A DNA stretch of 62,937 nucleotides, counting the filler, from Octopus bimaculoides (taxonomy: Eukaryota), in NCBI RefSeq assembly GCF_001194135.2. It is 8 parts of 8 records of this genome, joined end to end, with 100 filler letters (N's around TTAATTAATTAA, not from the genome) between each part and the next. Parts side by side here need not be neighbours in the genome. Positions count along the whole stretch, not along the records: positions 4,033 to 19,170 come from NC_068986.1; 7 more parts are not named here. The stretch is one strand, 5' to 3'. A program made the position numbers and the translations under genes. Every line of letters begins with the position of its first letter. Within the stretch, counting starts at the first letter, position 1. Under the pieces are notes generated by a model that searched no databases, was not told the origin of the DNA, and saw only the letters and a program-made list of their open reading frames with translations. Shown here one piece after another: positions 4,922-21,599 of this stretch.

Positions 4922-5697
4922 TTATAGTGAGTTTGTGTTGTGTGGACGCCCCAGACGACCGAAATAGATGAGGAATGGCTGGTGGAAGCCATCCTGTTTA
5001 ACTATGAGAACGAGACTGAGATTATCAAGGTGGCGAATTCGGCAGAGATAAACTGGCAAGGGAAGAACTTTGACGAGCCCAGAGAGCATGGAGTGGGCTT
5101 TGCAGTAAGGAACAGCTTGCTGAATATGATAGAACCAAACAGCGGCGGCTCTGAGCGACTCCCAACACTCTGCCTTAACACAAGCGAAGGCCCCATCAAC
5201 CTCGTCAGTGTGTACGCCCCAACGTTGTCTGCCACTTAGGACACTAAGGATGAGTTCTACGAGAACCTTGCATCTACCATCAGGAATATACCAAGTACCG
5301 AACAGCTTGTTCTCCTGGGCGACTTCAACGCTAGAGTGGGTGCAGACAACGACTCGTGGCCCTCTTGCCTTGATTCGTTTGGAGTGGGAAAACTCAATGA
5401 GAATGGTCAGCGACTGCTCGAGCTTTGTGCCCTTCACAACCTGTGCATCGCCAACTCCTTCTTCAAAACGAACCCCCAACACAAGGTCTCCTGGAGGTAC
5501 CCGCGCTCAAAGCACTGGCACCAACTGGATCCGATTGTGGTCAGGCGTGCTGCCATAAAAAACGTTCTCCATACACGCTCTTACCACAGTGCGGACTGCG
5601 ACACAGACCACTCCCTGGTATGCTGTAAGATCAGGCTGCAACCAAAAAGGTTCCACAGTGCAAAGAAGCCGGGGGGCCTCGCACATTGACGTTAGCA
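4922..5697 (+). pseudogene. RTE-clade non-LTR retrotransposon fragment, apurinic endonuclease (EEP) domain, frameshifted
   Basis: GVGFAV, LVSVYAPT, LLGDFNARVG, GKLNENGQRLLELC, IANSFFK...HKVSWRYPRSKHWHQLD, DCDTDHSLV across overlapping ORFs 4940-5239, 5208-5558 and 5336-5689. Confidence 0.9.
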
Positions 5698-6488: not shown

Positions 6489-7997
6489 ATGAAAAAAGGG
6501 AAATCATGTAGTTCAGAACTCATCTGGAGAAAAAAGCAGCCAGAGTATACGAAGTATTCTAACAGAACTGATACTTATGATAAGAGCTTCAGAAAAATGA
6601 GAGACGCTTTGCAATATTATGGTCCACTTGAAATATTTGAAACAATAATCACTCCAGAAATATATGAGCACATCATAAAGGAAATGTGAGGTATTCTGCA
6701 ACCAGTAAAAATAATACTGACGCACAATCAGTAGACAAACTCAAAGCATTTATTGGCATTCTCATGTTGTCCAGTTACCACAAGTTGCCCTCCACTAGAC
6801 AATACTGGTCAAATGAAGAGGATTTGAGTGTATCTCTGATCTATAAAGCTATGACAAGGAATCGTTTTCAGAATCTGAAAAGCATAATTCATTTCTATAA
6901 TGAGAACTGGGAGGAAAATAAAACTGATAAAGGTTTCAAAGTTCGCTCTCTAATTGAAATGATCCAAAACTCTTAAAAAATACAAGATTTTTGAAAAAAC
7001 TCTTTCAGTTGATGAAATGGTAATCAAGTACTACGGACACAATTCACTGAAACAATTTGTTAAAGGTAAACCCATTAGATTTGGTTACAAGTTTTGGGCC
7101 TTGTGTGGAGTGTCTGGATATTGTTATAACTTTGAACTATTTTGCGGTAAGAATGGAAAAGAAAGTCAATATGATGATCTCACTCTGGAAGCAGAGTTGT
7201 TCTTCAAATCCTTGAAGTGGTAGAAGATCCTCTCTCACACTGTATTTTTTGACAATTTATTTACAAGTTATGATTTGCTGGTTCACCTGTTGGAGAAAGG
7301 ATTCCAAGCAACAGGCACAATGAGAGAAAATCGACTAAAGAAATGTCCATTAAAAGATTCAAAATTGATGAAAAAGGAAAAAGAGGATCTTATGATTACA
7401 GATTTAATGTGACCAATGAAATACTTATAGTCAAGTGGCTTGACAATAAATGTGTGTCAATTGGTACTAACTTTGATGCAATTGAACCAACTAGTAATGT
7501 ACTTCACTGGAAAAGGCATGAAAAAACTAGAGGTAATGTTTCTCAACCTCACATTTTGACTACATATAACTATTGCATGGGAGGTGTCAATAAACATGAC
7601 TGGCTAGTGTCAAAATACACAGTTTCCATTCAAGGTAAAAAGTGGTATTGGCCACTATTTACATGATTTCTTGACATGGTCGTCGTGAATGCATGGGCTA
7701 TTTATAGTTTAGTTCATGATGGAAAGGGTGAAATATTAACATTACTCAACTTTCAAAGATATATTTGTCTTACATATCTGAAAAGTTCAACAAAAAAAAC
7801 AAACCAAAGGCATGACATCTTCCATCTCTAAGCTAATAAACAGCATGAGATATGATAGCAAAGGACATGCAATCGCAAAGCAAGAGAAGCAAGGGCAGTG
7901 TCAACATACAGACTGCCAAAGCAAACCCCTCAATTATTGTCAAAAATGCAATGTCACCCTTTGTGTGGATTCTTTTAGTCCTTATCATTCAAAATAA
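6489..7997 (+). pseudogene. piggyBac-family transposase (PGBD2/3-like), inactivated by stops and frameshifts
   Basis: AFIGILMLSSYHKLPS, MTRNRF, SVDEMVIKYYG, KPIRFGYKFWAL, FDNLFTSY, YNYCMGGVNKHD and a C-terminal Cys-rich domain (C-H-DC...CQKCNVTLC). Confidence 0.9.
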
Positions 7998-10240: not shown

Positions 10241-10480
10241 TCCACCATATAAGGAATGCTACAGCAACTGCTGCTGCACAAGCTGCAGAGAATGAAGAAC
10301 AATGTGCAATTTGCCATACAAGGAATGTTGCAACATGAGCTGCAGAGAATGAAGAACAATGCACAATTTGCCAAACAAGGAATGCTGCTGCATGAGCTAC
10401 AAAGAATGAAGGACAACCTGCAATTCAGCAGACAAGGAATGCTGCAATTGCTGCTGCACAAGCTGCAGAAGATTGAGATA
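10241..10480 (+). repeat. 57-bp (19-codon) degenerate tandem repeat in the Helitron 5' coding region
   Basis: The aatgaagaacaat-like unit starts at 10291, 10348 and 10405. Confidence 0.8.
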
Positions 10481-11376
10481 ATCGGCTGGAGAATAATGTT
10501 CAGCAGAGTATTTCAAGATCATGCAGTTCTCTGTTATCATTAAAAGCATTCGACTATGATTCTAATGTTAATTATGTTATCCACTCTGATATTAAAATTG
10601 GCAATATGTCTACCATTTGCCAGTTTTGCAACACCAAAAAGTGGTCATGAGAAACTCCTGGAATGTGTTGCTCCAATAGGAACGTTAAACCCCATCAGCA
10701 CCCTTGAGGATCTACCACAGCCATTGAAGCTTCTACTTACAAGCACAACAACAGAGTCAAAAAATTTTCTAGATAAGATCAGAAAATATAATTGTGCCAT
10801 TCAAATAACCTCTTTTAGGGCAAATATTGTCAGGGAAGGTGGATTTATGGCCACTTTCAAAGTGCACGGATAGGTGTATCACAGGACTGGATCATTCCAG
10901 CCTCTGGCAAATGAAGAGCTTCAATTTCTTCAGCTGTACTTTGTTGGCAACTATCAAGAACAAGCAGTCAGGCAGAATTCTATTTCACCTGGTACTAACC
11001 TGGATCTCACACTAAAACTTCAAGAAATGGTACGTGTGAAAAACAGCTATGTCCAGAGCTTCAAATATGCCTTGGAAACAGCACCTACAACAAATTTTAA
11101 TGAGGTACTTAATGCTGGCCAAAGGCCATCTCGGGAACATGCAGGTCACTATAATGTATCTGCATGCAATGAAATTGCTGTAGTTCTCCATGGTGACCAG
11201 CACAAGAAAAGAGACATTGTTCTCAAGCGTTGTGACAACACCTTACAATGGATCAGTGAAACACACAGATCCTACAATGCGCTCCAATATCCAGTGCTCT
11301 TCATGAATGGTGAAGATGGATACTATTTCAGTATTCTACAGCATAATACTGATGCAACCAATGAAAAACAAATTAA

Positions 11377-12378
11377 TGTTATATCCCTATCTCCCGAGCT
11401 GGGTTTGAAACCGTATTCTGGTTGTTGAGGACAATGGTATTTCCTTTGTCCTGTCAACAACCACAGCTATTTTTAGCGTAGGTGTGATCAATGACTCTTT
11501 CCGGTCATCGAAAGTTCAGAAAAACAAGTGAGGAATTGTACTGAACTGACCCAGCTTTGGAGGGGGGAAAGTAGCACTGTAAAGCTATGGCATTTGTGAT
11601 AAATACAACGGTCGAGTTGGTATCAAGGAGTTGGCGAGAGCAGTTGGCATCAAGCGGTTGGTGGACAGCAGTTGGATGAAGAACGCGAGCCGGTGTGAAG
11701 GCTAGCAGCCAACCAAGATGAACAGAGAGTCTGTCAGGCAGAGGCTGAGAAAGTACTAGTTAACCGATAGGGACTGAAGCAATGAGAGAGAGGAACAGAG
11801 AGATGGAACTGTTGTGGCAGCCAAGAGATGGTAGTAGTCAGTTGGTCACTTCTTGGATTGTAGTAGGAGCTTCGAAGAAAAGAAAATTCGTGCGGTGAAG
11901 GTTTGCTTAAATATTCTTTAAAAGTGTACTTGTCGTTACATGTTTTGAAAAAGAAAAAGAGATTTCGTTAACTGTGATGTTGACGGGTGGAAAAGAAAAG
12001 AAATAACTTTGTGACATGTTGTTAATGGAAAAGAAAAACAACGAAGTGAAGGAACTGTTAATTCGACTTGATATATGAACTCTTGATTGTAAACTTGTGA
12101 TTATGTAATGTTCTGAAACCTTTGTTAAATGCTATTGAATTTATAGTTATGCTTTATGCTCTGTTATGTATTGTTTGATGTAAAAAGAAAAAAAGTTAGT
12201 TCCACTACCCAACACATGGTCTCCGTGTTATTTCTTCCTCCCTTTGCCTGTTGTCTTTGTTACGTGCTCCGGCCTGGGCTTGGTCGTGGCGAACATCCCG
12301 ACTCACTGAGCGTCGACGTTCACGCGCGCGCGAGTTCTCTCTTCGTTTGAGGTGCTTCGCATGCGGACTTTCGTAACA
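11377..12378 (+). mobile_element. 5' LTR (~1.0 kb) of a Gypsy/Ty3 retrotransposon
   Basis: Begins TGTTA where the Helitron frame breaks, ends TAACA (inverted termini), and is followed by a PBS. Confidence 0.85.
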
Positions 12379-12381
12379 AAC

Positions 12382-12399
12382 TGGTGTCAGAAGTGGGAT
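12382..12399 (+). promoter_or_regulatory. Primer-binding site TGGTGTCAGAAGTGGGAT (tRNA 3'-end complement, probably Leu)
   Basis: TGG-initiated 18-mer 3 nt after the LTR end; a typical Gypsy PBS sequence. Confidence 0.85.
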
Positions 12400-12424
12400 T
12401 GATAGATTTGCTGCAGTGAGTTAG

Positions 12425-13366
12425 TTGTTTGTTATGGCTTCGGAAGGAGAGCGTACGAAGGGCCAGGCAGGGAGGGAGGAAGTATCCCTGGCCTTGATTG
12501 TGAGAATGCTGGAAGGACAGAAGGAGAGCTTCGCTGAACTCAGGAAAGAGCAACAGCAAATGACTACTGAAAAAATAAAAGAAAAATATAGAAACAGTTC
12601 ATGGAGAAAATGGCAACAGGAACTGTTAGATGAACTACAGAATGAACCAGATCAGCGTAAAATAATATGGTATTCGGATCCTATTGGGAATAGTGGAAAA
12701 ACATATTTATCGAGATACCTGCAGACTTTAGATGGTATAAGATTCGAGAATGGAAGAAGTCTGGATATAAAGTTCATGTACAATGGACAACGCATTGTTA
12801 TTTTTGACTTAACAAGAAGTCAAGAACAACATATCAACTACGAGGTTATGGAAAGCGTTAAAAATGGTCTGATATGTTCCTGTAAATACGTATCTGTCAC
12901 CAAAAGTTTTGAAATACCGCATGTAGTGGTATTTGCTAATTACGATCCAGATCAAACAAAGATGAGTGCGGATAGATGGGATATTCGTCCTCTTACACCC
13001 GCAGACAACACAATGGTATTTAAAGAAATACTACAAGAATTTCTAGAGAATGAGGTTGATATTGAAAATATGCCAGCGTTAGAAGATATAACCAACATGT
13101 ACAGTCAGGACACCGATGAATTAATTGACGAAATGAATCGTTCTGAATGTGAATACGAAATGGAAAAATATAAGAAGAGAAAGCTTAACTCCCCTACTCC
13201 TCTTATTAGACATGATGCAATAGACGGTAACATTTCATTCTTCTGCAATAACAATGTCGAGAAATGTAATTGTCAATTTGTTAGAAGAGAAAATGAAATG
13301 CTGATGGAGAAGATAAAGATGTTAAATGAAAAACTTGATAAATACGAAAGTGTAGATTCTGAATAA
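12425..13366 (+). CDS. Chimeric 313-aa ORF: Gypsy Gag N-terminus (~aa 4-46) fused in frame to a CRESS-virus Rep SF3-helicase domain (~aa 47-190) and an acidic/coiled-coil tail
   Basis: WQQELL...RKIIWYSDPIGNSGKT (Walker A), IVIFDL (Walker B), YEVMESVKNG...KY (B'), VVVFAN (motif C), SADRW (Arg finger). No HUH motifs. No stops. Likely start ATG at 12434. Confidence 0.85.
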   Translation: MFVMASEGERTKGQAGREEVSLALIVRMLEGQKESFAELRKEQQQMTTEKIKEKYRNSSWRKWQQELLDELQNEPDQRKIIWYSDPIGNSGKTYLSRYLQTLDGIRFENGRSLDIKFMYNGQRIVIFDLTRSQEQHINYEVMESVKNGLICSCKYVSVTKSFEIPHVVVFANYDPDQTKMSADRWDIRPLTPADNTMVFKEILQEFLENEVDIENMPALEDITNMYSQDTDELIDEMNRSECEYEMEKYKKRKLNSPTPLIRHDAIDGNISFFCNNNVEKCNCQFVRRENEMLMEKIKMLNEKLDKYESVDSE

Positions 13367-13770
13367 AATCTTTATTTCACGTAAATACATTGTTTGTTAT
13401 TTACGAATGTTTTTGCATCCTCTTGCACGTTATATGTATACTAATAACCCCAAAACATTCGCATCTTCGTCACGTCACGCGACGTTTACTCAATCACTCA
13501 TCCTTCTGCAGTGTGCTTTGTTGATAGTCAATCATTGTATGTAGCTCCGTTTCTGCGACCATAACAACGAATAATGACAAAATTGGTATAATCCATTACG
13601 GTATCTTTCGAAGACTGAACACACATTGCGATACCGTTAGCTGAATGTTGAGGAAATGCTTTATCGGGTACCTGGCCGAAAGGGGCCTCAGCCATATCCC
13701 ATTTCTGAACTCCACGAATATACATAGTAGGATATGGCATGCTGTCATTAGGATCGTAACTTTTGGAATC
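12563..13770. mobile_element. Endogenous CRESS-DNA-virus-like fragment (Rep 3' half, intergenic region, convergent ORF 3' end) inserted in gag
   Basis: Gag-like coiled coil stops at ~12562 and resumes at ~13771 (RQFREEFRRLSSDV). The intervening DNA is visibly more AT-rich and encodes the Rep helicase. Boundaries are uncertain by about 10 nt. Confidence 0.8.
13528..13770 (-). pseudogene. 5'-truncated convergent ORF, possibly the C-terminus of a viral capsid protein
   Basis: Frame is open from the gag junction: DSKSYDPNDSMPYPTMYIRGVQKWDMAEAPFGQ...DYTNFVIIRCYGRRNGATYND*. It is convergent with Rep. The capsid identity is inferred from position and composition only. Confidence 0.4.
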
Positions 13771-14898
13771 ACCGACAATTTAGGGAGGAGTTCCGCAGAC
13801 TGAGCAGTGATGTCGCATGGTGTAAACAGCAGGTGGAAAGGCTTAACGAGAGGATGGAGCGTGTTGAGAAATTTTGTGCTGCCGAGCCTGAGGTTGCTAA
13901 ACCTGAAGAAGTTGCTATTGCTGCGTCATCACGTGATACTCCGACGTCTGAGTGCGGATCTCCTGAAGTTCAGAGTAGCGGTGTGGTCCCAATTAGGAAG
14001 AAGTCACAGGAGTTTGATGGCAAGGTGTCGTGGGAAGCCTACCGGATCCAGTTCGAGATGCTAGCAGACCAAAACGATTGGGACGAGGGGCAAAGAGCCG
14101 TTCAGCTTGCCACTAGTCTGAAGGGTCCTGCACTGGAGGTGCTGGGCCAGCTGTCGAAAGTAGACAGGAATCAATACTCGGCGCTAGTTGAAGTTCTCAA
14201 CAGGAAATATGGCACTATGTGCCAGAGTGAAGTGTACAGGGCACGTCTCTGCACCCGTGTTAGGGTTCGAGGGGAGCCTCTACAACAGCTTGCCCAGGAT
14301 TTGGAAAGCACGGTACACAAAGCATACCCGACNNNNNNNNNNNNNNNNNNNNNNNNNNNNNNNNNNNNNNNNNNNNNNNNNNNNNNNNNNNNNNNNNNNN
14401 NNNNNNNNNNNNNNNNNNNNNNNNNNNNNNNNNNNNNNNNNNNNNNNNNNNNNNNNNNNNNNNNNNNNNNNNNNNNNNNNNNNNNNNNNNNNNNNNNNNN
14501 NNNNNNNNNNNNNNNNNNNNNNNNNNNNNNNNNNNNNNNNNNNNNNNNNNNNNNNNNNNNNNNNNNNNNNNNNNNNNNNNNNNNATGTGAAATCTAGCAC
14601 CGGAAATTTCCGGGTGAGTAACAGCTCCGGATTCATGGCTAGGAGAGTAAAAGTCCGTGAAGCTGAAGGACTTCGAAATAATCGAAAACTTTGTGAGCGG
14701 AACGAAGAGATGGCTGGTGTGTGTTGTTGGCACTGTGGGAGAAGTGGACACAGGCAGCGGGACTGCTACAGTTGGCGGCGAGAGAAGAAACAGAACGATA
14801 GAGCAGGATCTGTTTTCAAGGGCGAGTGTTGGTGTTGCAAGAAAAAGGGACACCTGAGTTATGACTGCCCAACAAGAAATAAAGAATCGGAAAACTAA
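13771..14898 (+). pseudogene. gag: Remainder of Gypsy gag (capsid-like domain plus two CCHC zinc knuckles), with an N gap at 14333-14584
   Basis: FDGKVSWEAYRIQFEMLADQNDW...LATSLKGPALEVL; CWHCGRSGHRQRDC and CWCCKKKGHLSYDC. Confidence 0.9.
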
Positions 14899-14947
14899 GA
14901 GGAGCTGGTGTTAAGGAGCCTCACACTCGAGGCGGGCATTCGTAACA
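14899..14947 (+). mobile_element. Short right end of the Gypsy element (pol absent; LTR-like 3' terminus TTCGTAACA)
   Basis: gcgggcattcgtaaca resembles the 5' LTR end gcggactttcgtaaca. The Helitron frame resumes immediately after it. Confidence 0.65.
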
Positions 14948-17499
14948 ATACCAACAAAACATTTCCTGCGTGGACTTCCATGCATTTCGCTTTATGACCC
15001 GAGTCAACTGTTTTAATCACCTCCACCATTCACAAGAACTCTATCACCAATTTACAGTTGATATGGGTGCAAAAATGGAGTCAGAAGGATTGTGGTACAT
15101 AAAATTAAATCAGAAAAAGTTGCATTCTGAGATTTACATTTATCTTCTAAATGGCACCAACAATGATGCAGCTCCTGGAAGCCTAGGACAAGTCTGTATC
15201 CTGCCATCAACTTTCACAGGAGGTTCCCACTACATGCACGAGAGAACCCAAGATGCTATAACATGCTGTATTATGGCAGGCCTGACCTATTTATAACTTT
15301 TACTTGCAATCCTAAATGGAATGAGATCAAGAATGAACTCCTCCCAGGTCAAAAGACCAAAGACAGACATGACCTCCTGGCCAGAGTCTTTCAGCTGAAA
15401 GTTAATTAAACTCCTCAACCACATCAAGAAAGTGCAGGTATTTGGATCTGTAAAATGTGACATGTACACAACTGAATGGTAAAAAAGAGGCTTTCCACAT
15501 GCGCAAATTCTGATTTGGCTGTCAACAAAAATCAGTTCCAATGACATTGACAAAATTATCTCTGTAGAGCTTCGAGATCCATCTACTGACAAGGAATTGC
15601 ATGTGATAGTGAAGACAAACATGGTGCATGGTCCATGTGGGTGTGGCTTCAACCTAATCTTACCATGTTTGAAAGACAATGTGTGCACCAAAAAGTTTTA
15701 CAGGCAGTTTTTTTCAAGAAACCCAGACTGGCGTTGACGGATATTCATCATGCAGACAAAGGAAACCAGAAGATGGAGGATTTACAGCAAAGATTGGTCA
15801 ACACGGGGTTGACGACAGATGGATAGTATTGTACTGTCTACTCCTATTAAAGGCATTCAATGCCCATATCAATGTTGAGTTCTATAACTCTGAGAAGTCC
15901 ATCAAGTACATAGATGATTATATACACAAGGGTTCAGATGCTGCCATGTTTAGCTGTCAACAAGAAAACAGCCGAGATGAGGTAACACAATACCAAGTGG
16001 GACGATACATCAGTAGCAATGAAGCTTTCTGGCGCAATTTTTTTTTTTACTTTACACTACACCAAAGGCACCCTGCCATTGAACAGCTTGCAGTGCACCT
16101 GGAAAATGGTCAAAGTGTGTACTTCACCAATGCTAATGCAGCTCAATTGACACAGGAACCAAAGGACACCACCCTCACTGCATTTTTCAAACATTGCCAA
16201 GTAGGTCCATTTGTTCAAATCTTGCTGTATCCCAAGGTACCATCCTACTACACCTGGAACAAGAAGACATGGACACAAAGACAGGCAGGTCAAGCTATAT
16301 TGATGGACAACCTGGCATAAAGTTTAACAATTGCATGTGGAGAGTTTACACAGTCATCCCAGCCAACACATGTGTTACCATTTCTGTCTGCTACTGCATG
16401 AGGTCAGAGGACCAGGTTTCCAAGACCTAAAAACTGTTGATGGACAAGTTTGTGCTACATATAGGGAAACCAGCTTTAAACATGGACTACTAGAACATGG
16501 TGCACAGTGGGATGCAATTTTGGCCACCTAGAAGTCTTGGGGCACTATTTGCAATATCATTGCTACCATGTGAACTGTATGATCCTCTTTGTGGCTCAAG
16601 TATAGAGATGACCTGCCTGAAGATCTGAAACATCAAGCACAATTGCAGTTTCCTATCATGGAAGTAGGTTTCAGTCATGAAGTCTAATTGACATAGAAGA
16701 CATGAAGCACTAATTGACATAGAAGACAAGATTGTTTTAATGAGTAGAAATGCTTTGCCCACATATGGCCTGCCCCAAACCTAGCAAACAGGGTCAACCA
16801 CCTTTCCCAAAGGTATCTTAGAAGAAACATCCTACAACATTGATGCTCTTGCCAGATATGTCATTGAAACTGAGTCAAAACTGCTTCCGGACCAGCAACG
16901 GGCTTACAACACTATTGTTGACTGTATGTGCCACTGAAAAAGAGGCATCTTTTTCTTGGAAGCATCTGGCGGAACAGGAAAAATATTTGTGACAAAACTT
17001 CTCCTCACCCAAGTTAGGCAGCACAAGAACATTGCATTAGCTGTGGCATTCTCTGGGATTGCTGCAACTTTGCTGCCTGGTGGCAGGACAGTACATTCAA
17101 CCTTTAAGCTTCCTCTGAATTTAGCAACATCAGCAAGAGCTCAGACAAGGCACAAGTGCTAAGAAGGTACCAGCTCATTGTGTGCACCGTGACACACAAA
17201 GGAGCACTTGAAGCACTTGATAAAACCTTACAAGACATCAGAGACTGTCAGGATCCAATGGGAGATGTTACTCTCCTGTGGTCTGAGGATTTCAAGCAGA
17301 CTCTTCTAGCTATTCCCAAAGGAATCAGGGCAGATGAAGTCCGAGCATGTCTTATGTCCTCTTCATTGTGGCACCAGGTCACAACATTGACTCTTAACAC
17401 CAACATGAGAGCTCCACTGTACAGCAACCAACCGTCAGCAAAATCCCTGAGGTCATGACAAAAACATTTTTAGACAGACAACAATAATGGGGATTTCTT

Positions 17500-18560
17500 T
17501 TTTCCAGATGGCCGGTCACTTGACTGTTCAGGAGTGAGCTAAGATAGCAGAATGCTATGAAGTGTGGAATTCCACTGTTTTGGTTCAGAGATGGTGGCAT
17601 GCATGGAAAGGTAAGCATGCAACACTACATCTGGAGACAATAAAAAGTTGTCATGCAAAGCTGATGACTACGGGCTCTGTGAAAGATGCAAGAAGTGGCC
17701 GTCCAGCCACATCCTGATCAGTGGAAAACGTGGCAACAGTGCAAGAAATGTTTAATCACAACCTGAAAAAGTCAACACATCAAGCAGCTTGTGAAAGTGG
17801 ACTAACAAGACACACAATAGGTATGGTATTGCATAAAGAAATGAAGTTTTGTCTGTGGAAACCCCATTATGTAGCTAAAACCAGGCTGACTTTGACCACA
17901 GAATGGAATATGGAGAGTTAGTGCTAGGTTGGCATGACAATTGGCCTGAATTATTTGAAAACATCCTCTGAAGTAACGAGGCTGCATTCCATGTTGGTGG
18001 TTTCATTAGTCATCATAACTGCCATTACTGGGCATCATGCGATAAGAATCTGAACATGACAGTTGAGAGGATGCAAGCTCAACCAAAAGTGACCATGTGG
18101 TGCTGAATGACAGCAACTAGAGTCATCAGCCCACATCTGTGTGACACCATGAATATGGACTGCTATCTTCCGATGCTTGAAAATTATGTGTGGCCCATGG
18201 TGTCTGGCTGGGATAAGATTGGTGGCCTGATATTCATGCAGGATGGTGCACCATCCCATTTTGCTCTTTCCAGGAGCCCAGATGAGACAACACGGTCCTC
18301 ATGAATGGCCTCCAAGAAGTTCAGATCTCACTCCATGTGATTTTTACCTGTGGGTTACACAAAAGAGATGTACAAAACAAAACCTCACACACTGGAGTAC
18401 TTGGAGACATGGATACAGGAGGTTCTCAAGGATATCCCTGACGATGTACTTCAGAAAGTTGTTCATTCCATCCATGGTCATTTGAGGAAACTGGTTGATG
18501 TCATCACCCACCCACCCACCCTGTCTGTCTATCTATCTCTATGGACGGACGGTAGACACA
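17500..18560 (+). pseudogene. Tc1/mariner superfamily transposase remnant (maT/DD37D-like)
   Basis: TGSVKDARSGRP, KSTHQAACESG, EAAFHVGG..HNCHYW, IFMQDGAPSHF, WPPRSSDLTPCDFYLW. Confidence 0.85.
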
Positions 18561-19270
18561 TCGGCTCCAAGTAAGTTTGCATTTTTTGCCTTTAAAAGTT
18601 TGTTTTTGAATCATATTTTGTATATAAAAGTTGTGCAACAACTGATACATTCGGTTGTGCAACTTGTTTGCACGGGAAATCTGCACCATGTGGCGTATTT
18701 CCCGATTTTATAAAATTAATTTCGACTTTCTTAGCCATTTTTATTTTGAGAATGGCCACTCCAAGCCATGTGACGAAAGCCGGTCTGTTTGGCCACTCGT
18801 TTGACATTAATTTCCCTACACTGCCTTCACAACTTCACGAAGTAGCACACAAACAGGTGCCAGTGTTAGCATGAATGCTAACACTGCCACCACCACTACA
18901 AATGCTACCACCATTACAACTACCACCAACATCTATCTATCTATCTATCGACTGACGTGTTGACGCATCGGCTCGCAAGGTAACCTTTTATTTTGACCCT
19001 TTTCTCGCCCACATTTTGAAAAAAATTTTTGAACATTGTCTGTATAAGGCACCCAACTTCGTTTGTGTGCTTTTACAGGGGAGGAATTGGCCGCTAGGGG
19101 CAGTTTCAACCCAACAAAACTTGTGTATTTTTTCTCAACATTTGGAAAATGTCGAGGAATGTTGTAATGGNNNNNNNNNNNNNNNNNNNNNNNNNNNNNN
19201 NNNNNNNNNNNNNNTTAATTAATTAANNNNNNNNNNNNNNNNNNNNNNNNNNNNNNNNNNNNNNNNNNNN

Positions 19271-19503
19271 GGCACATAAAAGACACCATTTCGAGCGTGG
19301 CCGTTTTCGTGCGGGTGACACGTAAAAGCACCCACTACACTCTCTGAGTGGTTGGCGTTAGGAAGGGCATCCAGCTGTAGAAACTCTGCCAAATCAGACT
19401 GGAGCCTGGTGTTGCCATCCGGTTTCACCAGTCCTCAGTCAAATCGTCCAACCCATGCTAGCATGGAAAGCGGACGTTAAACGATGATGATGATGATGAT
19501 GAT
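19271..19503 (+). mobile_element. SINE 3' portion with RTE-like tail ending in (GAT)n
   Basis: ggcgttaggaagggcatccagc...gcatggaaagcggacgttaaacgatgatgatg; related decayed sequence on - at ~27200-27370 and ~32470-32660. Confidence 0.65.
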
Positions 19504-20079
19504 ATTCACATACATACATGCAAACACATATTGCCTACATATACATAATATATATATAGACACACACACACATGTATAGTCTGTACCTGCTCCATAAACG
19601 CTTAATACTAACTACCATTATCCATTACTAAACCAATATTAATATATTAATATATTAATATTAATATTTGAAAGTGACCAGCCAGACATTTCCCAGTTAC
19701 CAGAATCCCTTCCAACACAGGAATTCTTTTCCCACTTTTTTGTTTAAATCAGAGCTATTTACTCAGATATATATATAAAAAACAACAAAAAACTCTAATC
19801 AATAAAATTTGTGATTAATTATGAATTATTTTCATAATTAATTTTTTACATCTTTCAAACTTTTGGACTGCGGTCATGCAGGAGCATTGTCTTGAAGGGT
19901 TTTTCTTGAACAAACTGATTCCAGTAATTATGTTTTTTGTTTTTCTTGCTTTTTTTGCAAATCTGGTTTTTATTTTATTGGTCACTTTTACAGAACTGCT
20001 AAATTTTTGGGACATTAACAAACCAACACACCAATTCTCAAGTGTTGATGGCAGACGCAAAGATAGAGAGATGCATTAG

Positions 20080-20200
20080 AAGTTTGCTTCCTAACCACAT
20101 AATTCTGGGTTCAATCCCACAGTGTAGAATCTTGGGAAAGTGTCTTCTACTATAGCCCTAGGCCAACCAAAGCCTTGTCAGTTGATCTGATAGATGGTTG
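20080..20200 (+). mobile_element. tRNA-head SINE fragment; related copies at ~22310-22480 (-), ~25790-25880 (+), ~30960-31110 (-), ~57340-57435 (-), ~57820-57970 (+)
   Basis: B-box-like ggttcaatccc/ggttcaaaccc followed by a shared core (gtgtcttctactatagccc...ccaaagccttgt). Confidence 0.65.
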
Positions 20201-21599
20201 ATGGGACAAGTGTGCTTGCTATATCAACTTATTACTTGAGAACTGCTTAGTCTATGAAGCCCTGGAGGGATGAAAAACAAAGTAAGTTTTGACTGGTTTT
20301 GAACGCAGGCCAAAGAGAATGCAGTAAAGGGGAGTGGGGGGGGGGCAATACAATACAATGAAATATTGCAAAGCATTTTGTCCACGGCGCTACCAAAGAT
20401 ACTACGATTTACGCCTTGATTAATTTAATGGCAAAAAAAAAGAAAACAAGAGACATGCAATAAAATAACAGGGTACCTTCTAATGGACACACACACACAC
20501 ACACACGAATAACACCCTACCTTTTTTTTTATTTATTACATTAATATTTGTCTCTATTATAATAACTGCGTGAGAAACTATACAAGTATAATTGCAAATG
20601 CGCTTATGTGCATTAAGAGTGTGCATGTGTGTGTGTGAGCCTGCATGCAAATGAAAAGATGATGCGTGAGTCTATTCTGGTGTTGGTAGATAATATTTTT
20701 GCTAGTCTCTGTGTTTATATTCTTTGTGTTACATGTTTTTAACTGTTATTTTCCTTTTATTTGTTTCTTATTTTTCTTATTGTATTTTTCCCTCTTCCCT
20801 CTTCTTCTTCTTCTCGGTCTTTTCAGTAACAGCTTGCTCTAAAAGGAGACAACAAAGAACATGTCTCATATTATACTGAAGGTGTTCCTATCAAACAGTA
20901 ACAAAAAGAAAAAGAAAAAAGTACGTGGACCAGGACAGTGATCAGCATGCTGGTGATGATGATGATGATGATGGTAATAACAGTGGTGGGAGTGGCAGCG
21001 GTGGGGATGTACTGTAGCATTACTAATAACACATTGTAACAGGATTACTAATAGTTTATCTTAAAAGACAGATACACACACACACGCATGCATATATATA
21101 TATAAATACATACATGCACATACATACACACAATACTTATATATATACCTATACATATATATATATATACACACACACATAGGTTTATATACACATGTAT
21201 ATAAACTACTCAGGGAGAAGATGATAACAATAAGGTGTTGTAGAGGTGGCTGAAGAAATGAATTACAGGACAATGGTGACAACATCTTTATCATCATCAT
21301 CATCATCATCATCAAGGTGAACAACAATAGAACTTTCGGAAACAACAGTAACACCACCACCAACAACAACAACACAACCTAAACTGATTCACAGTTTGGG
21401 TGTGGTCGAACATTAGCCTGGTTTCTGCGAAGGATAGTAAGAAAAGGATAGAAATTTAAATCATCATAGGTTGACTCTTTACTATCAATTTTTACTGTTT
21501 TTAGTCAGTGGTAATTATTTATTTATTTTCTACCTTTTTTTTCTCATATTGATAAAAAAAAGTAAAGACAACAGAAAAAGGTGACTGTCATGGTTTTCC

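What the first reader, a model, noticed from the sequence alone, without database searches (positions are those of the whole stretch)
12563..13770. ~1.2-kb endogenous fragment with the layout of an ambisense circular ssDNA virus in a probable cephalopod genome
Seen: Rep 3' half on + (stop at 13366), a ~160-nt non-coding interval, and a second frame on - that is open from the right junction to a stop at 13528. Both genes lack their 5' ends, as expected if a linear piece were cut from a circle across the 3'-3' intergenic region. Established: many CRESS viruses have convergent rep and cap genes, whereas nanoviruses and alphasatellites are one gene per circle. Inference: a nanovirus-like helicase paired with a convergent gene points to an unclassified CRESS lineage infecting the germline of this host, or to a CRESS-derived mobile element.
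Basis: partly seen in the sequence, partly recalled or inferred. Interest (0 to 1): 0.8.

Follow-up and report, generated by a model that had tools for sequence, protein, structure and literature searches.

The report
Circular DNA virus fossil in octopus
A 1.2-kb piece of a small circular single-stranded DNA virus (the back ends of its replication and coat genes, facing each other) sits inside a retrotransposon gene in an octopus genome; it is a well-preserved but incomplete viral fossil of a known kind, and it points to a virus lineage that has entered octopus germlines more than once.

Summary

**What is there**
- Window 12563-13366 (+) is the 3' two-thirds of a CRESS-virus Rep. It holds the whole SF3 helicase and a lineage-specific tail of about 120 aa. 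The HUH domain is absent.
- 13367-13527 is a 161-nt spacer.
- 13528-13770 (-) encodes the last 80 residues of a circovirus-like capsid protein.

**Evidence for a viral origin**
- A 2.47-kb public contig (L005) carries the same two genes at full or near-full length, converging on each other.
- O. vulgaris chromosomes hold two further copies with the same layout but different ends and flanks.
- The copies differ mostly at synonymous sites (pS 0.67-0.86, pN 0.09-0.15). They therefore diverged as working viruses and integrated separately.

**How it sits in the host**
- The piece splits a retrotransposon gag ORF. About five gag codons are lost and there is no target duplication, which fits end joining of a linear piece of the circle.
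- That gag element lies inside a decayed Helitron.
- Neither viral fragment contains a stop or frameshift, so the integration looks young.

- "Nanovirus-like" and "CRESS-derived mobile element" are not supported. The nearest relatives are unclassified circovirus-like viruses.

**Extra finding**
- A 76-nt non-coding block in the spacer is conserved as strongly as second codon positions.

Verdict: a new member of a known kind, of moderate interest.

The parts
12552..13770 (.). The whole virus-derived fragment (endogenous viral element), about 1.21 kb. The left end is ambiguous within 12552-12562; the right end is 13770 +/- 1.
   Evidence: blastn to L001 (O. vulgaris chromosome OX597824.1) covers 12602-13765 at 78.5%. 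blastn to L005 covers 12552-13764 at 74.8%. G+C drops inside the fragment.
12563..13366 (+). Rep gene fragment, 5'-truncated. It holds the SF3 helicase domain, a lineage-specific C-terminal extension of about 120 aa (about 13010-13363), and the stop codon. Walker A is at 12686-12703, Walker B at 12800-12808 and motif C at 12932-12940. Breaks: one 5' truncation, 0 stops, 0 frameshifts.
   Evidence: Homologues are listed and aligned. All 18 invariant and 31 nearly invariant family columns are kept. tblastn with L005 Rep residues 152-426 gives 80% identity in one frame.
13362..13376 (.). Back-to-back poly(A)-signal hexamers: AATAAA on + (13362-13367, overlapping the rep stop) and TTTATT (AATAAA on -, 13371-13376).
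   Evidence: Read directly from the sequence. Both are kept in window, L001, L005 and L004. That they function as poly(A) signals is inferred.
13367..13527 (.). The 3'-3' intergenic spacer, 161 nt.
13424..13499 (.). Conserved non-coding block of 76 nt. It holds a short hairpin (stem 13429-13433 / 13444-13448, 10-nt loop) and a near-palindrome (13472-13485).
   Evidence: Only 8 of 76 columns vary among window, L001 and L005. Third codon positions of the flanking genes are identical in only 33-35% of columns. One frame is open in all three copies, but 7 of its codons change residue, so the pattern is not coding-like. One stem pair changes on both sides in L001. There is no Rfam match.
13528..13770 (-). 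Capsid (cap) gene fragment, 5'-truncated: the last 80 codons plus the stop. Breaks: one 5' truncation, 0 stops, 0 frameshifts.
   Evidence: Translation is. tblastn with L005 Cap residues 178-257 gives 77.5% identity. The family alignment is. hhalign against the CynNCXV capsid is.
12434..12562 (+). Host retrotransposon gag, N-terminal about 42 codons. It is fused in frame to the Rep fragment, giving an ORF 12434-13366 of 310 codons.
   Evidence: Aligns to the N-terminus of O. bimaculoides gag-like protein P0041. ORF list. The 310-aa product is present in public protein sets as P0062.
13770..14898 (+). Host retrotransposon gag, the remainder, including two CCHC zinc knuckles. An assembly gap lies at 14333-14584.
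   Evidence: Octopus gag-like homologues at 59-86% identity. Pfam zf-CCHC, with weak PNMA and DUF1759 matches. The N run is located.
10556..17458 (+). Decayed Helitron Rep/helicase ORF pieces (10556-11428 and 14970-17458). The gag element lies between them, roughly 11.4-14.96 kb; these bounds are approximate.
   Evidence: Pfam Helitron_like_N for 14970-15293 and PIF1 for 17156-17455. ORF list. That 10556-11428 is the Helitron N-terminal part rests on my own reading of the translation, not on a tool hit.

Best explanation
The fragment is an endogenous viral element: a contiguous arc, about half, of the roughly 2.4-2.5 kb genome of a circovirus-like virus (Cressdnaviricota) whose rep and cap genes converge.

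**What the arc contains**
- It runs from the middle of rep, through the 3'-3' intergenic region, to the last third of cap.
- It lacks the HUH endonuclease domain, the 5' intergenic region (where the closest relatives keep their stem-loop origin), and two-thirds of cap. It therefore cannot replicate or be packaged.

**How it got there (inferred)**
- A linear double-stranded piece of the viral circle was joined into a chromosome break inside the gag ORF of a resident retrotransposon copy.
- The joining was non-homologous or microhomology-assisted. About five gag codons were lost and no target duplication was made.
- That gag copy sits inside an older, decayed Helitron.

**Independent and recent**
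- The event is independent of the related insertions in O. vulgaris.
- It is recent relative to the divergence of those viruses, because both viral frames are still unbroken.

**Shown versus inferred**
- Shown: homology, layout, truncations, host flanks, and purifying-selection divergence between copies.
- Inferred: the end-joining mechanism, the germline route, and the age.
For: **Rep**
- The Rep fragment matches CRESS Reps at 51-63% identity over the helicase, including relatives with PF02407.
- Walker A, Walker B and motif C are intact.

**Full-length relative**
- L005 has a complete Cap ORF of 262 aa with an Arg-rich N-terminus.
- It converges with a Rep that carries PF02407, motifs I-III and the same C-terminal extension.

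**Same layout elsewhere**
- The convergent layout recurs in L001 and L002 (O. vulgaris chromosomes), in L009, and in L010, the published circular genome JX908739.

**Host flanks**
- Intact gag paralogues read straight through the insertion site. The window lacks about 5 codons there.
- Both junctions fall within the same short stretch of gag.
- The window's gag matches 14 gag-like proteins, mostly from three Octopus species; where their translations cover the insertion site they read through it uninterrupted.

**Independent integrations**
- pS is 0.67-0.86 and pN is 0.09-0.15 for both genes among window, L001 and L005.
- The flanks are unrelated and the truncation points differ.

**Young age**
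- There are 0 stops and 0 frameshifts in 347 codons.
- 5.3% of single-base changes would create a stop, so P(no stop) is 0.064 at 5% neutral divergence.

**Where the origin lies in relatives**
- L009 has a 9-bp stem with TAGTATTAC, and L010 has CAGTATTAC. Both lie in the 5'-5' intergenic region on the cap-sense strand.
Against: - No orthologous empty or filled site in another octopus species could be examined, so germline fixation and age are not shown directly.
- The exact host assembly of the window was not returned. A look-up of the window's own protein found no contig.
- The left junction cannot be placed to the base, and no gag DNA close enough for a nucleotide-level junction comparison was available.
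- Rep is in the same orientation and frame as gag. An RNA-level capture during reverse transcription would also give that result.
- Unbroken frames could also mean selection on the fused ORF rather than youth.
Confidence: 0.8

Rival explanations
1. Capture at the RNA level. While a retrotransposon RNA was being reverse-transcribed, the enzyme switched from the gag template to a read-through rep-sense viral transcript and then back to gag. The chimera was therefore born during retrotransposition and inserted into the Helitron as one unit.
For: - Rep has the same orientation as gag and is in frame with it.
- Both junctions lie about 5 codons apart in gag, and the left one has a short microhomology.
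- The gag copy is itself unbroken, so it is also young.
Against: - The fragment runs about 400 nt past the conserved AATAAA at the rep stop and into antisense cap, so the transcript would have had to ignore its poly(A) signal.
- Same orientation and frame has a 1-in-6 chance by accident.
- Where gag homologues cover the insertion site, none of their translations carries the insert.
Confidence: 0.12
2. It is a co-opted host or transposon gene. The 310-codon gag N-terminus::Rep-helicase ORF is expressed and kept open by selection, for example as a helicase-only Rep that interferes with related viruses.
For: - The ORF 12434-13366 is unbroken and begins at the gag ATG.
- All invariant helicase residues are kept.
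- The nonsynonymous branch leading to the window copy is the shortest of the three (pN values).
Against: - The cap fragment and the non-coding block are equally well preserved, although they would be useless to such a gene.
- No expression data were available.
- It sits in a nest of transposons.
- Low dN/dS between copies is explained by divergence before integration.
Confidence: 0.06
3. It is a CRESS-derived mobile element, or an assembly or contaminant artefact.
For: - Several copies exist in octopus genomes.
- One relative, L005, sits in a bacterial assembly where it must be a contaminant.
Against: - The copies have different ends and unrelated flanks, and show no terminal repeats or target duplication.
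- Cap is under purifying selection between copies.
- Both junctions lie in contiguous sequence inside one octopus gag ORF.
- Relatives lie on chromosome-scale O. vulgaris scaffolds of 78-100 Mb.
Confidence: 0.02

Closest known systems
Cyanoramphus nest associated circular X DNA virus (JX908739; unclassified CRESS-DNA virus) and the metagenomic contig L009
   Same: - Rep helicase is 51-61% identical.
- rep and cap converge, and the 3'-3' intergenic region is long (332-386 nt).
- The capsid is remotely homologous (hhalign 96%).
- In these relatives the stem-loop origin lies in the 5'-5' region on the cap-sense strand.
   Different: - The octopus lineage has a Rep C-terminal extension of about 120 aa that they lack.
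- Its capsid is too diverged for BLASTP to detect.
- It has a 76-nt conserved block in the 3' spacer. That block was not found in viral, metagenome or prokaryote-genome collections.
Circovirus and other CRESS-virus endogenous elements in animal and protist genomes. An example is the whole CRESS genomes integrated in Entamoeba and Giardia (PMC7493932). That circovirus Rep fossils occur in vertebrates is from my own knowledge.
   Same: Virus-derived Rep, and sometimes Cap, is flanked by host DNA. Such elements are used to infer the host of a virus lineage otherwise known only from metagenomes.
   Different: - The host here is a cephalopod, for which I found no report in the searchable library.
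- The piece spans both gene ends and the spacer.
- It lies inside a retrotransposon gag, in frame with it.
Circoviridae (Circovirus and Cyclovirus)
   Same: - The Rep family profile matches porcine circovirus 2 Rep structures best, at E about 1e-28.
- Cap relatives touch Pfam Circo_capsid.
- The layout is ambisense.
   Different: - Circo_capsid scores stay below Pfam's cut-off.
- The genome is evidently larger: L005 holds 2.39 kb of unique sequence.
- The 3' spacer is long and Rep has an extension.
- The origin was not observed in the octopus lineage.
Small intergenic region of mastreviruses (Geminiviridae). This is a lead from my own knowledge and was not tested here.
   Same: It is a conserved non-coding region between the 3' ends of convergent genes, holding both poly(A) signals and a site used for complementary-strand synthesis.
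   Different: No sequence relation was tested or expected, and the function of the octopus-lineage block is unknown.

Membership tests
Endogenous viral element of a CRESS-DNA virus (Cressdnaviricota) | Rep homologue with SF3 helicase motifs | tested here: met
   Walker A, Walker B and motif C are present, and identity to CRESS Reps carrying PF02407 is 51-63%.
Endogenous viral element of a CRESS-DNA virus (Cressdnaviricota) | HUH endonuclease domain of Rep | tested here: not met
   It is absent from the window, where Rep begins at residue 152 of the L005 protein. It is present in the relative L005 (PF02407, E 2.8e-18, motifs I-III). The element is therefore a truncated derivative.
Endogenous viral element of a CRESS-DNA virus (Cressdnaviricota) | Host DNA on both sides in contiguous sequence | tested here: met
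   The two halves of an octopus gag ORF flank it, about 5 codons apart in intact paralogues. The nearest assembly gap is 560 nt away.
Endogenous viral element of a CRESS-DNA virus (Cressdnaviricota) | Inherited through the germline (same site in other individuals or species) | not testable with these tools
   No octopus genome or read collection could be searched by DNA. The look-up of the window's protein found no contig.
Circoviridae | Stem-loop origin with a nonanucleotide between the 5' ends of rep and cap | tested here: inconclusive
   That region is not in the window, and L005 is cut off there. It is present in the relatives L009 and L010.
Circoviridae | Capsid protein of the circovirus family (Pfam PF02443) | tested here: inconclusive
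   L005 Cap scores 25.0 bits and relative P0059 scores 35.4 bits, against a cut-off of 36.2. The window's 80-aa fragment alone gives no hit. The structure model failed, with pLDDT 37.
Circoviridae | Genome of about 1.7-2.1 kb (figure from my own knowledge) | tested here: not met
   L005 holds about 2.39 kb of non-artefact sequence and is still incomplete. L009 is 2445 nt and L010 is 2308 nt.
Nanoviridae / alphasatellites | One gene per circle, with no capsid gene next to rep | tested here: not met
   A convergent cap lies next to rep in the window, L001, L002 and L005.
Nanoviridae / alphasatellites | Rep closest to nanovirus Reps | tested here: not met
   The family profile matches circovirus Rep chains at E 1e-26 to 1e-29 and nanovirus Rep chains at 4.5e-11.
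Transposon derived from a Rep-encoding element (Helitron-like or other) | Repeated copies with the same termini, terminal repeats or hairpins, and target-site features | tested here: not met
   The window, L001, L003 and L002 end at different points of the viral map and have unrelated flanks. There are no terminal repeats around the fragment, and a target deletion instead of a duplication.

The most novel reading that the evidence does not exclude
A still-circulating, undescribed circovirus-like lineage infects octopods and repeatedly leaves pieces in their germline. L005 could be a near-complete present-day genome of it. In this reading, the window's unbroken gag::Rep-helicase ORF is expressed from the retrotransposon promoter, either as a truncated helicase-only Rep or as a source of small RNAs, and acts against the virus. 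The 76-nt block in the 3' spacer would be a new kind of cis element for this lineage, such as a complementary-strand origin or a capsid-mRNA 3'UTR signal.
Probability: 0.12. Interest if true: 0.65.

Novelty: new member of a known kind. Interest (0 to 1): 0.4.

Why it matters
Very little is known about DNA viruses of cephalopods, and most CRESS viruses known from metagenomes have no assigned host.

- **Host assignment.** Several independent integrations, each carrying both rep and cap, tie one unclassified CRESS lineage to octopods. The same kind of argument tied other lineages to Entamoeba and Giardia (PMC7493932).
- **Mechanism of integration.** The clean junctions inside a known host ORF are a small natural record of how such DNA enters a chromosome.
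- **A likely functional element.** The conserved 76-nt spacer block marks a probable cis element that nobody has described.

It does not change the general picture of viral fossils.

Tried and rejected
- **Structure of the capsid part.** AlphaFold on a 9-sequence alignment gave pLDDT 37. The model was unusable, so no fold search was run.
- **Solved structures.**
  - The capsid profile found nothing in the PDB.
  - The Rep fragment alone gave only spurious Pumilio matches.
- **Other libraries.** PHROGs gave nothing for the capsid fragment. Rfam on the spacer gave only a chance sub-threshold bacterial sRNA match.
- **Origin in the 3' spacer: considered and set aside.** The short hairpin has a loop resembling a nonanucleotide. 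However, the two closest genomes keep a canonical 9-bp stem-loop in the 5' region. The hairpin here has only 5 weak pairs, and three sequences give no usable covariation.
- **Small ORF in the spacer: rejected.** One frame is open in all three copies, but nearly every variable column changes the residue.
- **Searches for exogenous relatives.**
  - The exact spacer pattern was sought in viral, metagenome and prokaryote-genome contigs.
  - Rep was sought in viral and metagenome contigs.
  - All were negative.
- **Source of the window.** The exact-protein look-up found no contig.
- **Literature.** Searches for cephalopod or octopus CRESS fossils found nothing relevant. The accession prefix of the Logan read sets gave an unrelated paper, so the species behind L003-L008 is unknown.
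- **Circularity.** No terminal repeat was found in L005, L009 or L010. In L009 the capsid frame runs off both contig ends, which fits a circle but was not taken further.
Full report
**1. What is in the sequence**

The Rep frame on the + strand runs into the stop TAA at 13364-13366. A 161-nt spacer follows (13367-13527). A frame on the - strand is open from 13779 down to its stop at 13530-13528. G+C falls to 0.33-0.36 across the fragment, against 0.43-0.47 on either side.

**2. The + frame is a CRESS-virus Rep without its front half**

- The translation of 12563-13363 finds 37 proteins.
  - Octopus vulgaris proteins match at 88% and 51% identity.
  - A tubeworm (Lamellibrachia) protein also matches.
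  - Many Reps from small contigs carry Pfam PF02407. They include Cyanoramphus nest associated circular X DNA virus, and match at 51-63% identity over the helicase half.
- Walker A, Walker B and motif C are present (12686-12703, 12800-12808, 12932-12940). All 18 invariant and 31 nearly invariant columns of the family alignment are kept.
- The last 120 residues or so (about 13010-13363) are shared only with the octopus copies and contig L005. They form a lineage-specific extension.
- A profile of the family matches circovirus Rep structures at E about 1e-28, and nanovirus Rep at 4.5e-11. "Nanovirus-like" is therefore not the best label.

**3. The - frame is the end of a capsid gene**

- Its longer homologue in O. 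vulgaris (L001, 163 codons) led to P0038.
- P0038 lies on L005, a 2467-nt contig in an Erwinia amylovora assembly, where it can only be a contaminant.
- L005 carries a 262-codon ORF with an arginine-rich N-terminus and a weak Circo_capsid match (E 2.7e-5, below Pfam's cut-off).
- That ORF converges on a Rep with PF02407 (E 2.8e-18), motifs I-III, the helicase and the same C-terminal extension.
- The window holds Cap residues 178-257 at 77.5% identity and Rep residues 152-426 at 80% identity, each in one frame with no stop.
- A library-wide HMMER search found only nine capsid relatives. Three of them are full-length, Arg-rich proteins of about 280 aa, one of which scores just under the Circo_capsid cut-off.
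- The family profile matches the capsid of the Cyanoramphus virus at hhalign probability 96%, E 4.5e-9.
- A structure model failed (pLDDT 37), and sequence search of the PDB found nothing.

**4. The layout recurs, and relatives are circles**

| Locus | Source | Layout |
|---|---|---|
| L001 | O. vulgaris chromosome OX597824.1 | Convergent rep and cap; both unbroken but truncated at points different from the window's |
| L002 | O. vulgaris chromosome OX597828.1 | A more distant relative. Near-full-length Rep with one internal deletion and one frame change; near-full-length Cap with one stop |
| L005 | Contaminant contig in a bacterial assembly | Convergent; genes full or near-full length |
| L009 | The closest metagenomic Rep contig, 2445 nt | Convergent |
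| L010 | Published circular genome JX908739, 2308 nt | Convergent |

- In L009 and L010 a canonical stem-loop or nonanucleotide (TAGTATTAC, CAGTATTAC) lies in the 5'-5' intergenic region on the cap-sense strand. Their 3' spacers are long, at 332 and 386 nt.
- That 5' region is absent from the window.
- L005 breaks off there in an 80-nt poly-C artefact.
- I therefore did not see a circular junction for the octopus lineage itself.

**5. Independent integrations**

- Window and L001 share 78.5% of nucleotides over 1179 nt, but their flanks are unrelated: gag in the window, GPCR genes in L001.
- Among window, L001 and L005, synonymous sites are saturated (pS 0.67-0.86) while pN is 0.09-0.15. This holds in rep (both the helicase and the extension) and in cap.
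- Third codon positions are identical in all three copies in 33-35% of columns. Second positions are identical in 88-89%.
- The copies therefore diverged while both genes were under purifying selection, as viruses, and entered the genomes separately.
- Further truncated copies occur on short Logan contigs of unknown species (L003, L004, L006-L008).

**6. The host site**

- The flanks are the two halves of a retrotransposon gag ORF.
- The window's gag finds 14 gag-like homologues, mostly in three Octopus species (O. bimaculoides, O. vulgaris, O. sinensis). It has CCHC zinc knuckles.
- Intact paralogues read ...LRKEQQRL(R/Q)EDH(R/W)QFKEEF... The window reads ...LRKEQQQ[insert]HRQFREEF... About five codons are missing and nothing is duplicated.
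- Right junction: capsid homology ends and gag homology begins at 13770.
- Left junction: both partners read an AACAGCA-like string, so the break lies somewhere in 12552-12562.
- Where homologues' translations cover the insertion site they read through it with no insert.
- The gag piece lies between parts of a decayed Helitron ORF (Helitron_like_N and PIF1). LINE-like and piggyBac remains lie further upstream.
- A small deletion, a possible microhomology and no duplication are what end joining of a linear DNA into a break would leave. This mechanism is an inference.
- A double template switch during reverse transcription is the main rival. It needs a rep transcript that reads about 400 nt past its conserved AATAAA.

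**7. State of preservation**

- Each viral gene has one 5' truncation and no stop or frameshift, over 347 codons in all.
- 5.3% of possible single-base changes would create a stop. The chance of seeing none is 0.33 at 2% neutral divergence, 0.064 at 5% and 0.004 at 10%.
- Either the insertion is young or the frames are maintained.
- The gag start codon at 12434 opens a 310-codon gag::Rep-helicase ORF, which public protein sets already list (P0062). No expression data could be consulted.

**8. A conserved non-coding block**

- In the spacer, 13424-13499 has only 8 variable columns out of 76 among the three diverged copies. That is as conserved as second codon positions.
- It is not coding. One frame is open in all three copies, but 7 of its codons change residue.
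- It holds a 5-bp hairpin with a 10-nt loop, in which one pair changes on both sides in L001. It also holds a 14-nt palindrome that is perfect in L001 and L005 and has one mismatch in the window.
- AATAAA at the rep stop and AATAAA on the other strand a few bases later are kept in four copies. If both are used, the block lies in the 3' untranslated part of the capsid mRNA.
- Its function is unknown. I rank the candidates as follows:
  1. a complementary-strand or other replication element;
  2. an mRNA 3'-end element;
  3. the origin itself, which is least likely given where the relatives keep theirs.

**9. Comparison and novelty**

- CRESS-virus fossils in animal and protist genomes are a known kind (for example PMC7493932).
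- I found no report for cephalopods in the searchable library. I also found no close exogenous relative in viral, metagenome or prokaryote-genome collections.
- The element is a new member of a known kind.
- The lineage features that look undescribed are the Rep extension, the long 3' spacer with its conserved block, and repeated entry into octopus genomes.

Noticed in passing
window 13424-13499 (also L001 about 10845-10920 and L005 about 983-1058): A 76-nt non-coding block in the 3'-3' spacer is as conserved as second codon positions among three copies whose synonymous sites are saturated. It holds a short hairpin and a near-palindrome. Its function is unknown.
   Followed up: partly
window 13362-13376: AATAAA overlaps the rep stop, and an AATAAA on the opposite strand follows a few bases later. 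Both are kept in four copies. They look like back-to-back poly(A) signals for the two convergent genes.
   Followed up: partly
window about 13010-13363: Rep of this lineage has a C-terminal extension of about 120 aa, with an acidic stretch, a small Cys cluster and a coiled-coil-like tail. It is shared by the octopus copies and L005, absent from other CRESS Reps, and matches no Pfam family.
   Followed up: partly
window 12434-13366: The gag start codon and 42 gag codons are fused in frame to the Rep helicase fragment, giving an unbroken 310-codon ORF. Public protein sets already list it as a predicted protein (P0062).
   Followed up: partly
L005 (JBFBPM010000001.1 in GCA_044652805.1, labelled Erwinia amylovora): A 2.47-kb contig in a bacterial assembly encodes a eukaryote-type CRESS Rep and capsid about 75% identical in DNA to the octopus fragment. 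It ends in an 80-nt poly-C run. It is almost certainly a contaminant of unknown source.
   Followed up: partly
L002 about 29360-31270 (O. vulgaris OX597828.1): A near-genome-length fossil of a more distant relative (Rep 50%, Cap 32% identity to L005), with the same convergent layout and only a very short spacer. It has a few breaks, and the genome annotation calls it 'Replication associated protein'.
   Followed up: partly
proteins P0057 (589 aa) and P0058 (1110 aa): Two long predicted proteins hold capsid-like stretches in tandem: 4 exact repeats with a period of 137 aa, and at least 9 looser repeats. Their source and context are not available.
   Followed up: no
window 10260-10496: Four tandem copies of a 57-nt unit lie inside an ORF just upstream of the Helitron ORF pieces.
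   Followed up: no
window 4922-5690, 6686-7666, 10556-11428, 14970-17458: The surroundings are a nest of decayed transposons: LINE-like ORFs (my reading), a piggyBac-type transposase (DDE_Tnp_1_7), and Helitron Rep/helicase pieces (Helitron_like_N, PIF1).
   Followed up: partly
L001 9565-10032 (-) and gene model 10949-20801 (-): In O. vulgaris the related fossil abuts the start of a 7tm_1 receptor ORF. The public gene model joins the capsid-like ORF to a receptor gene, which is probably an annotation artefact.
   Followed up: no
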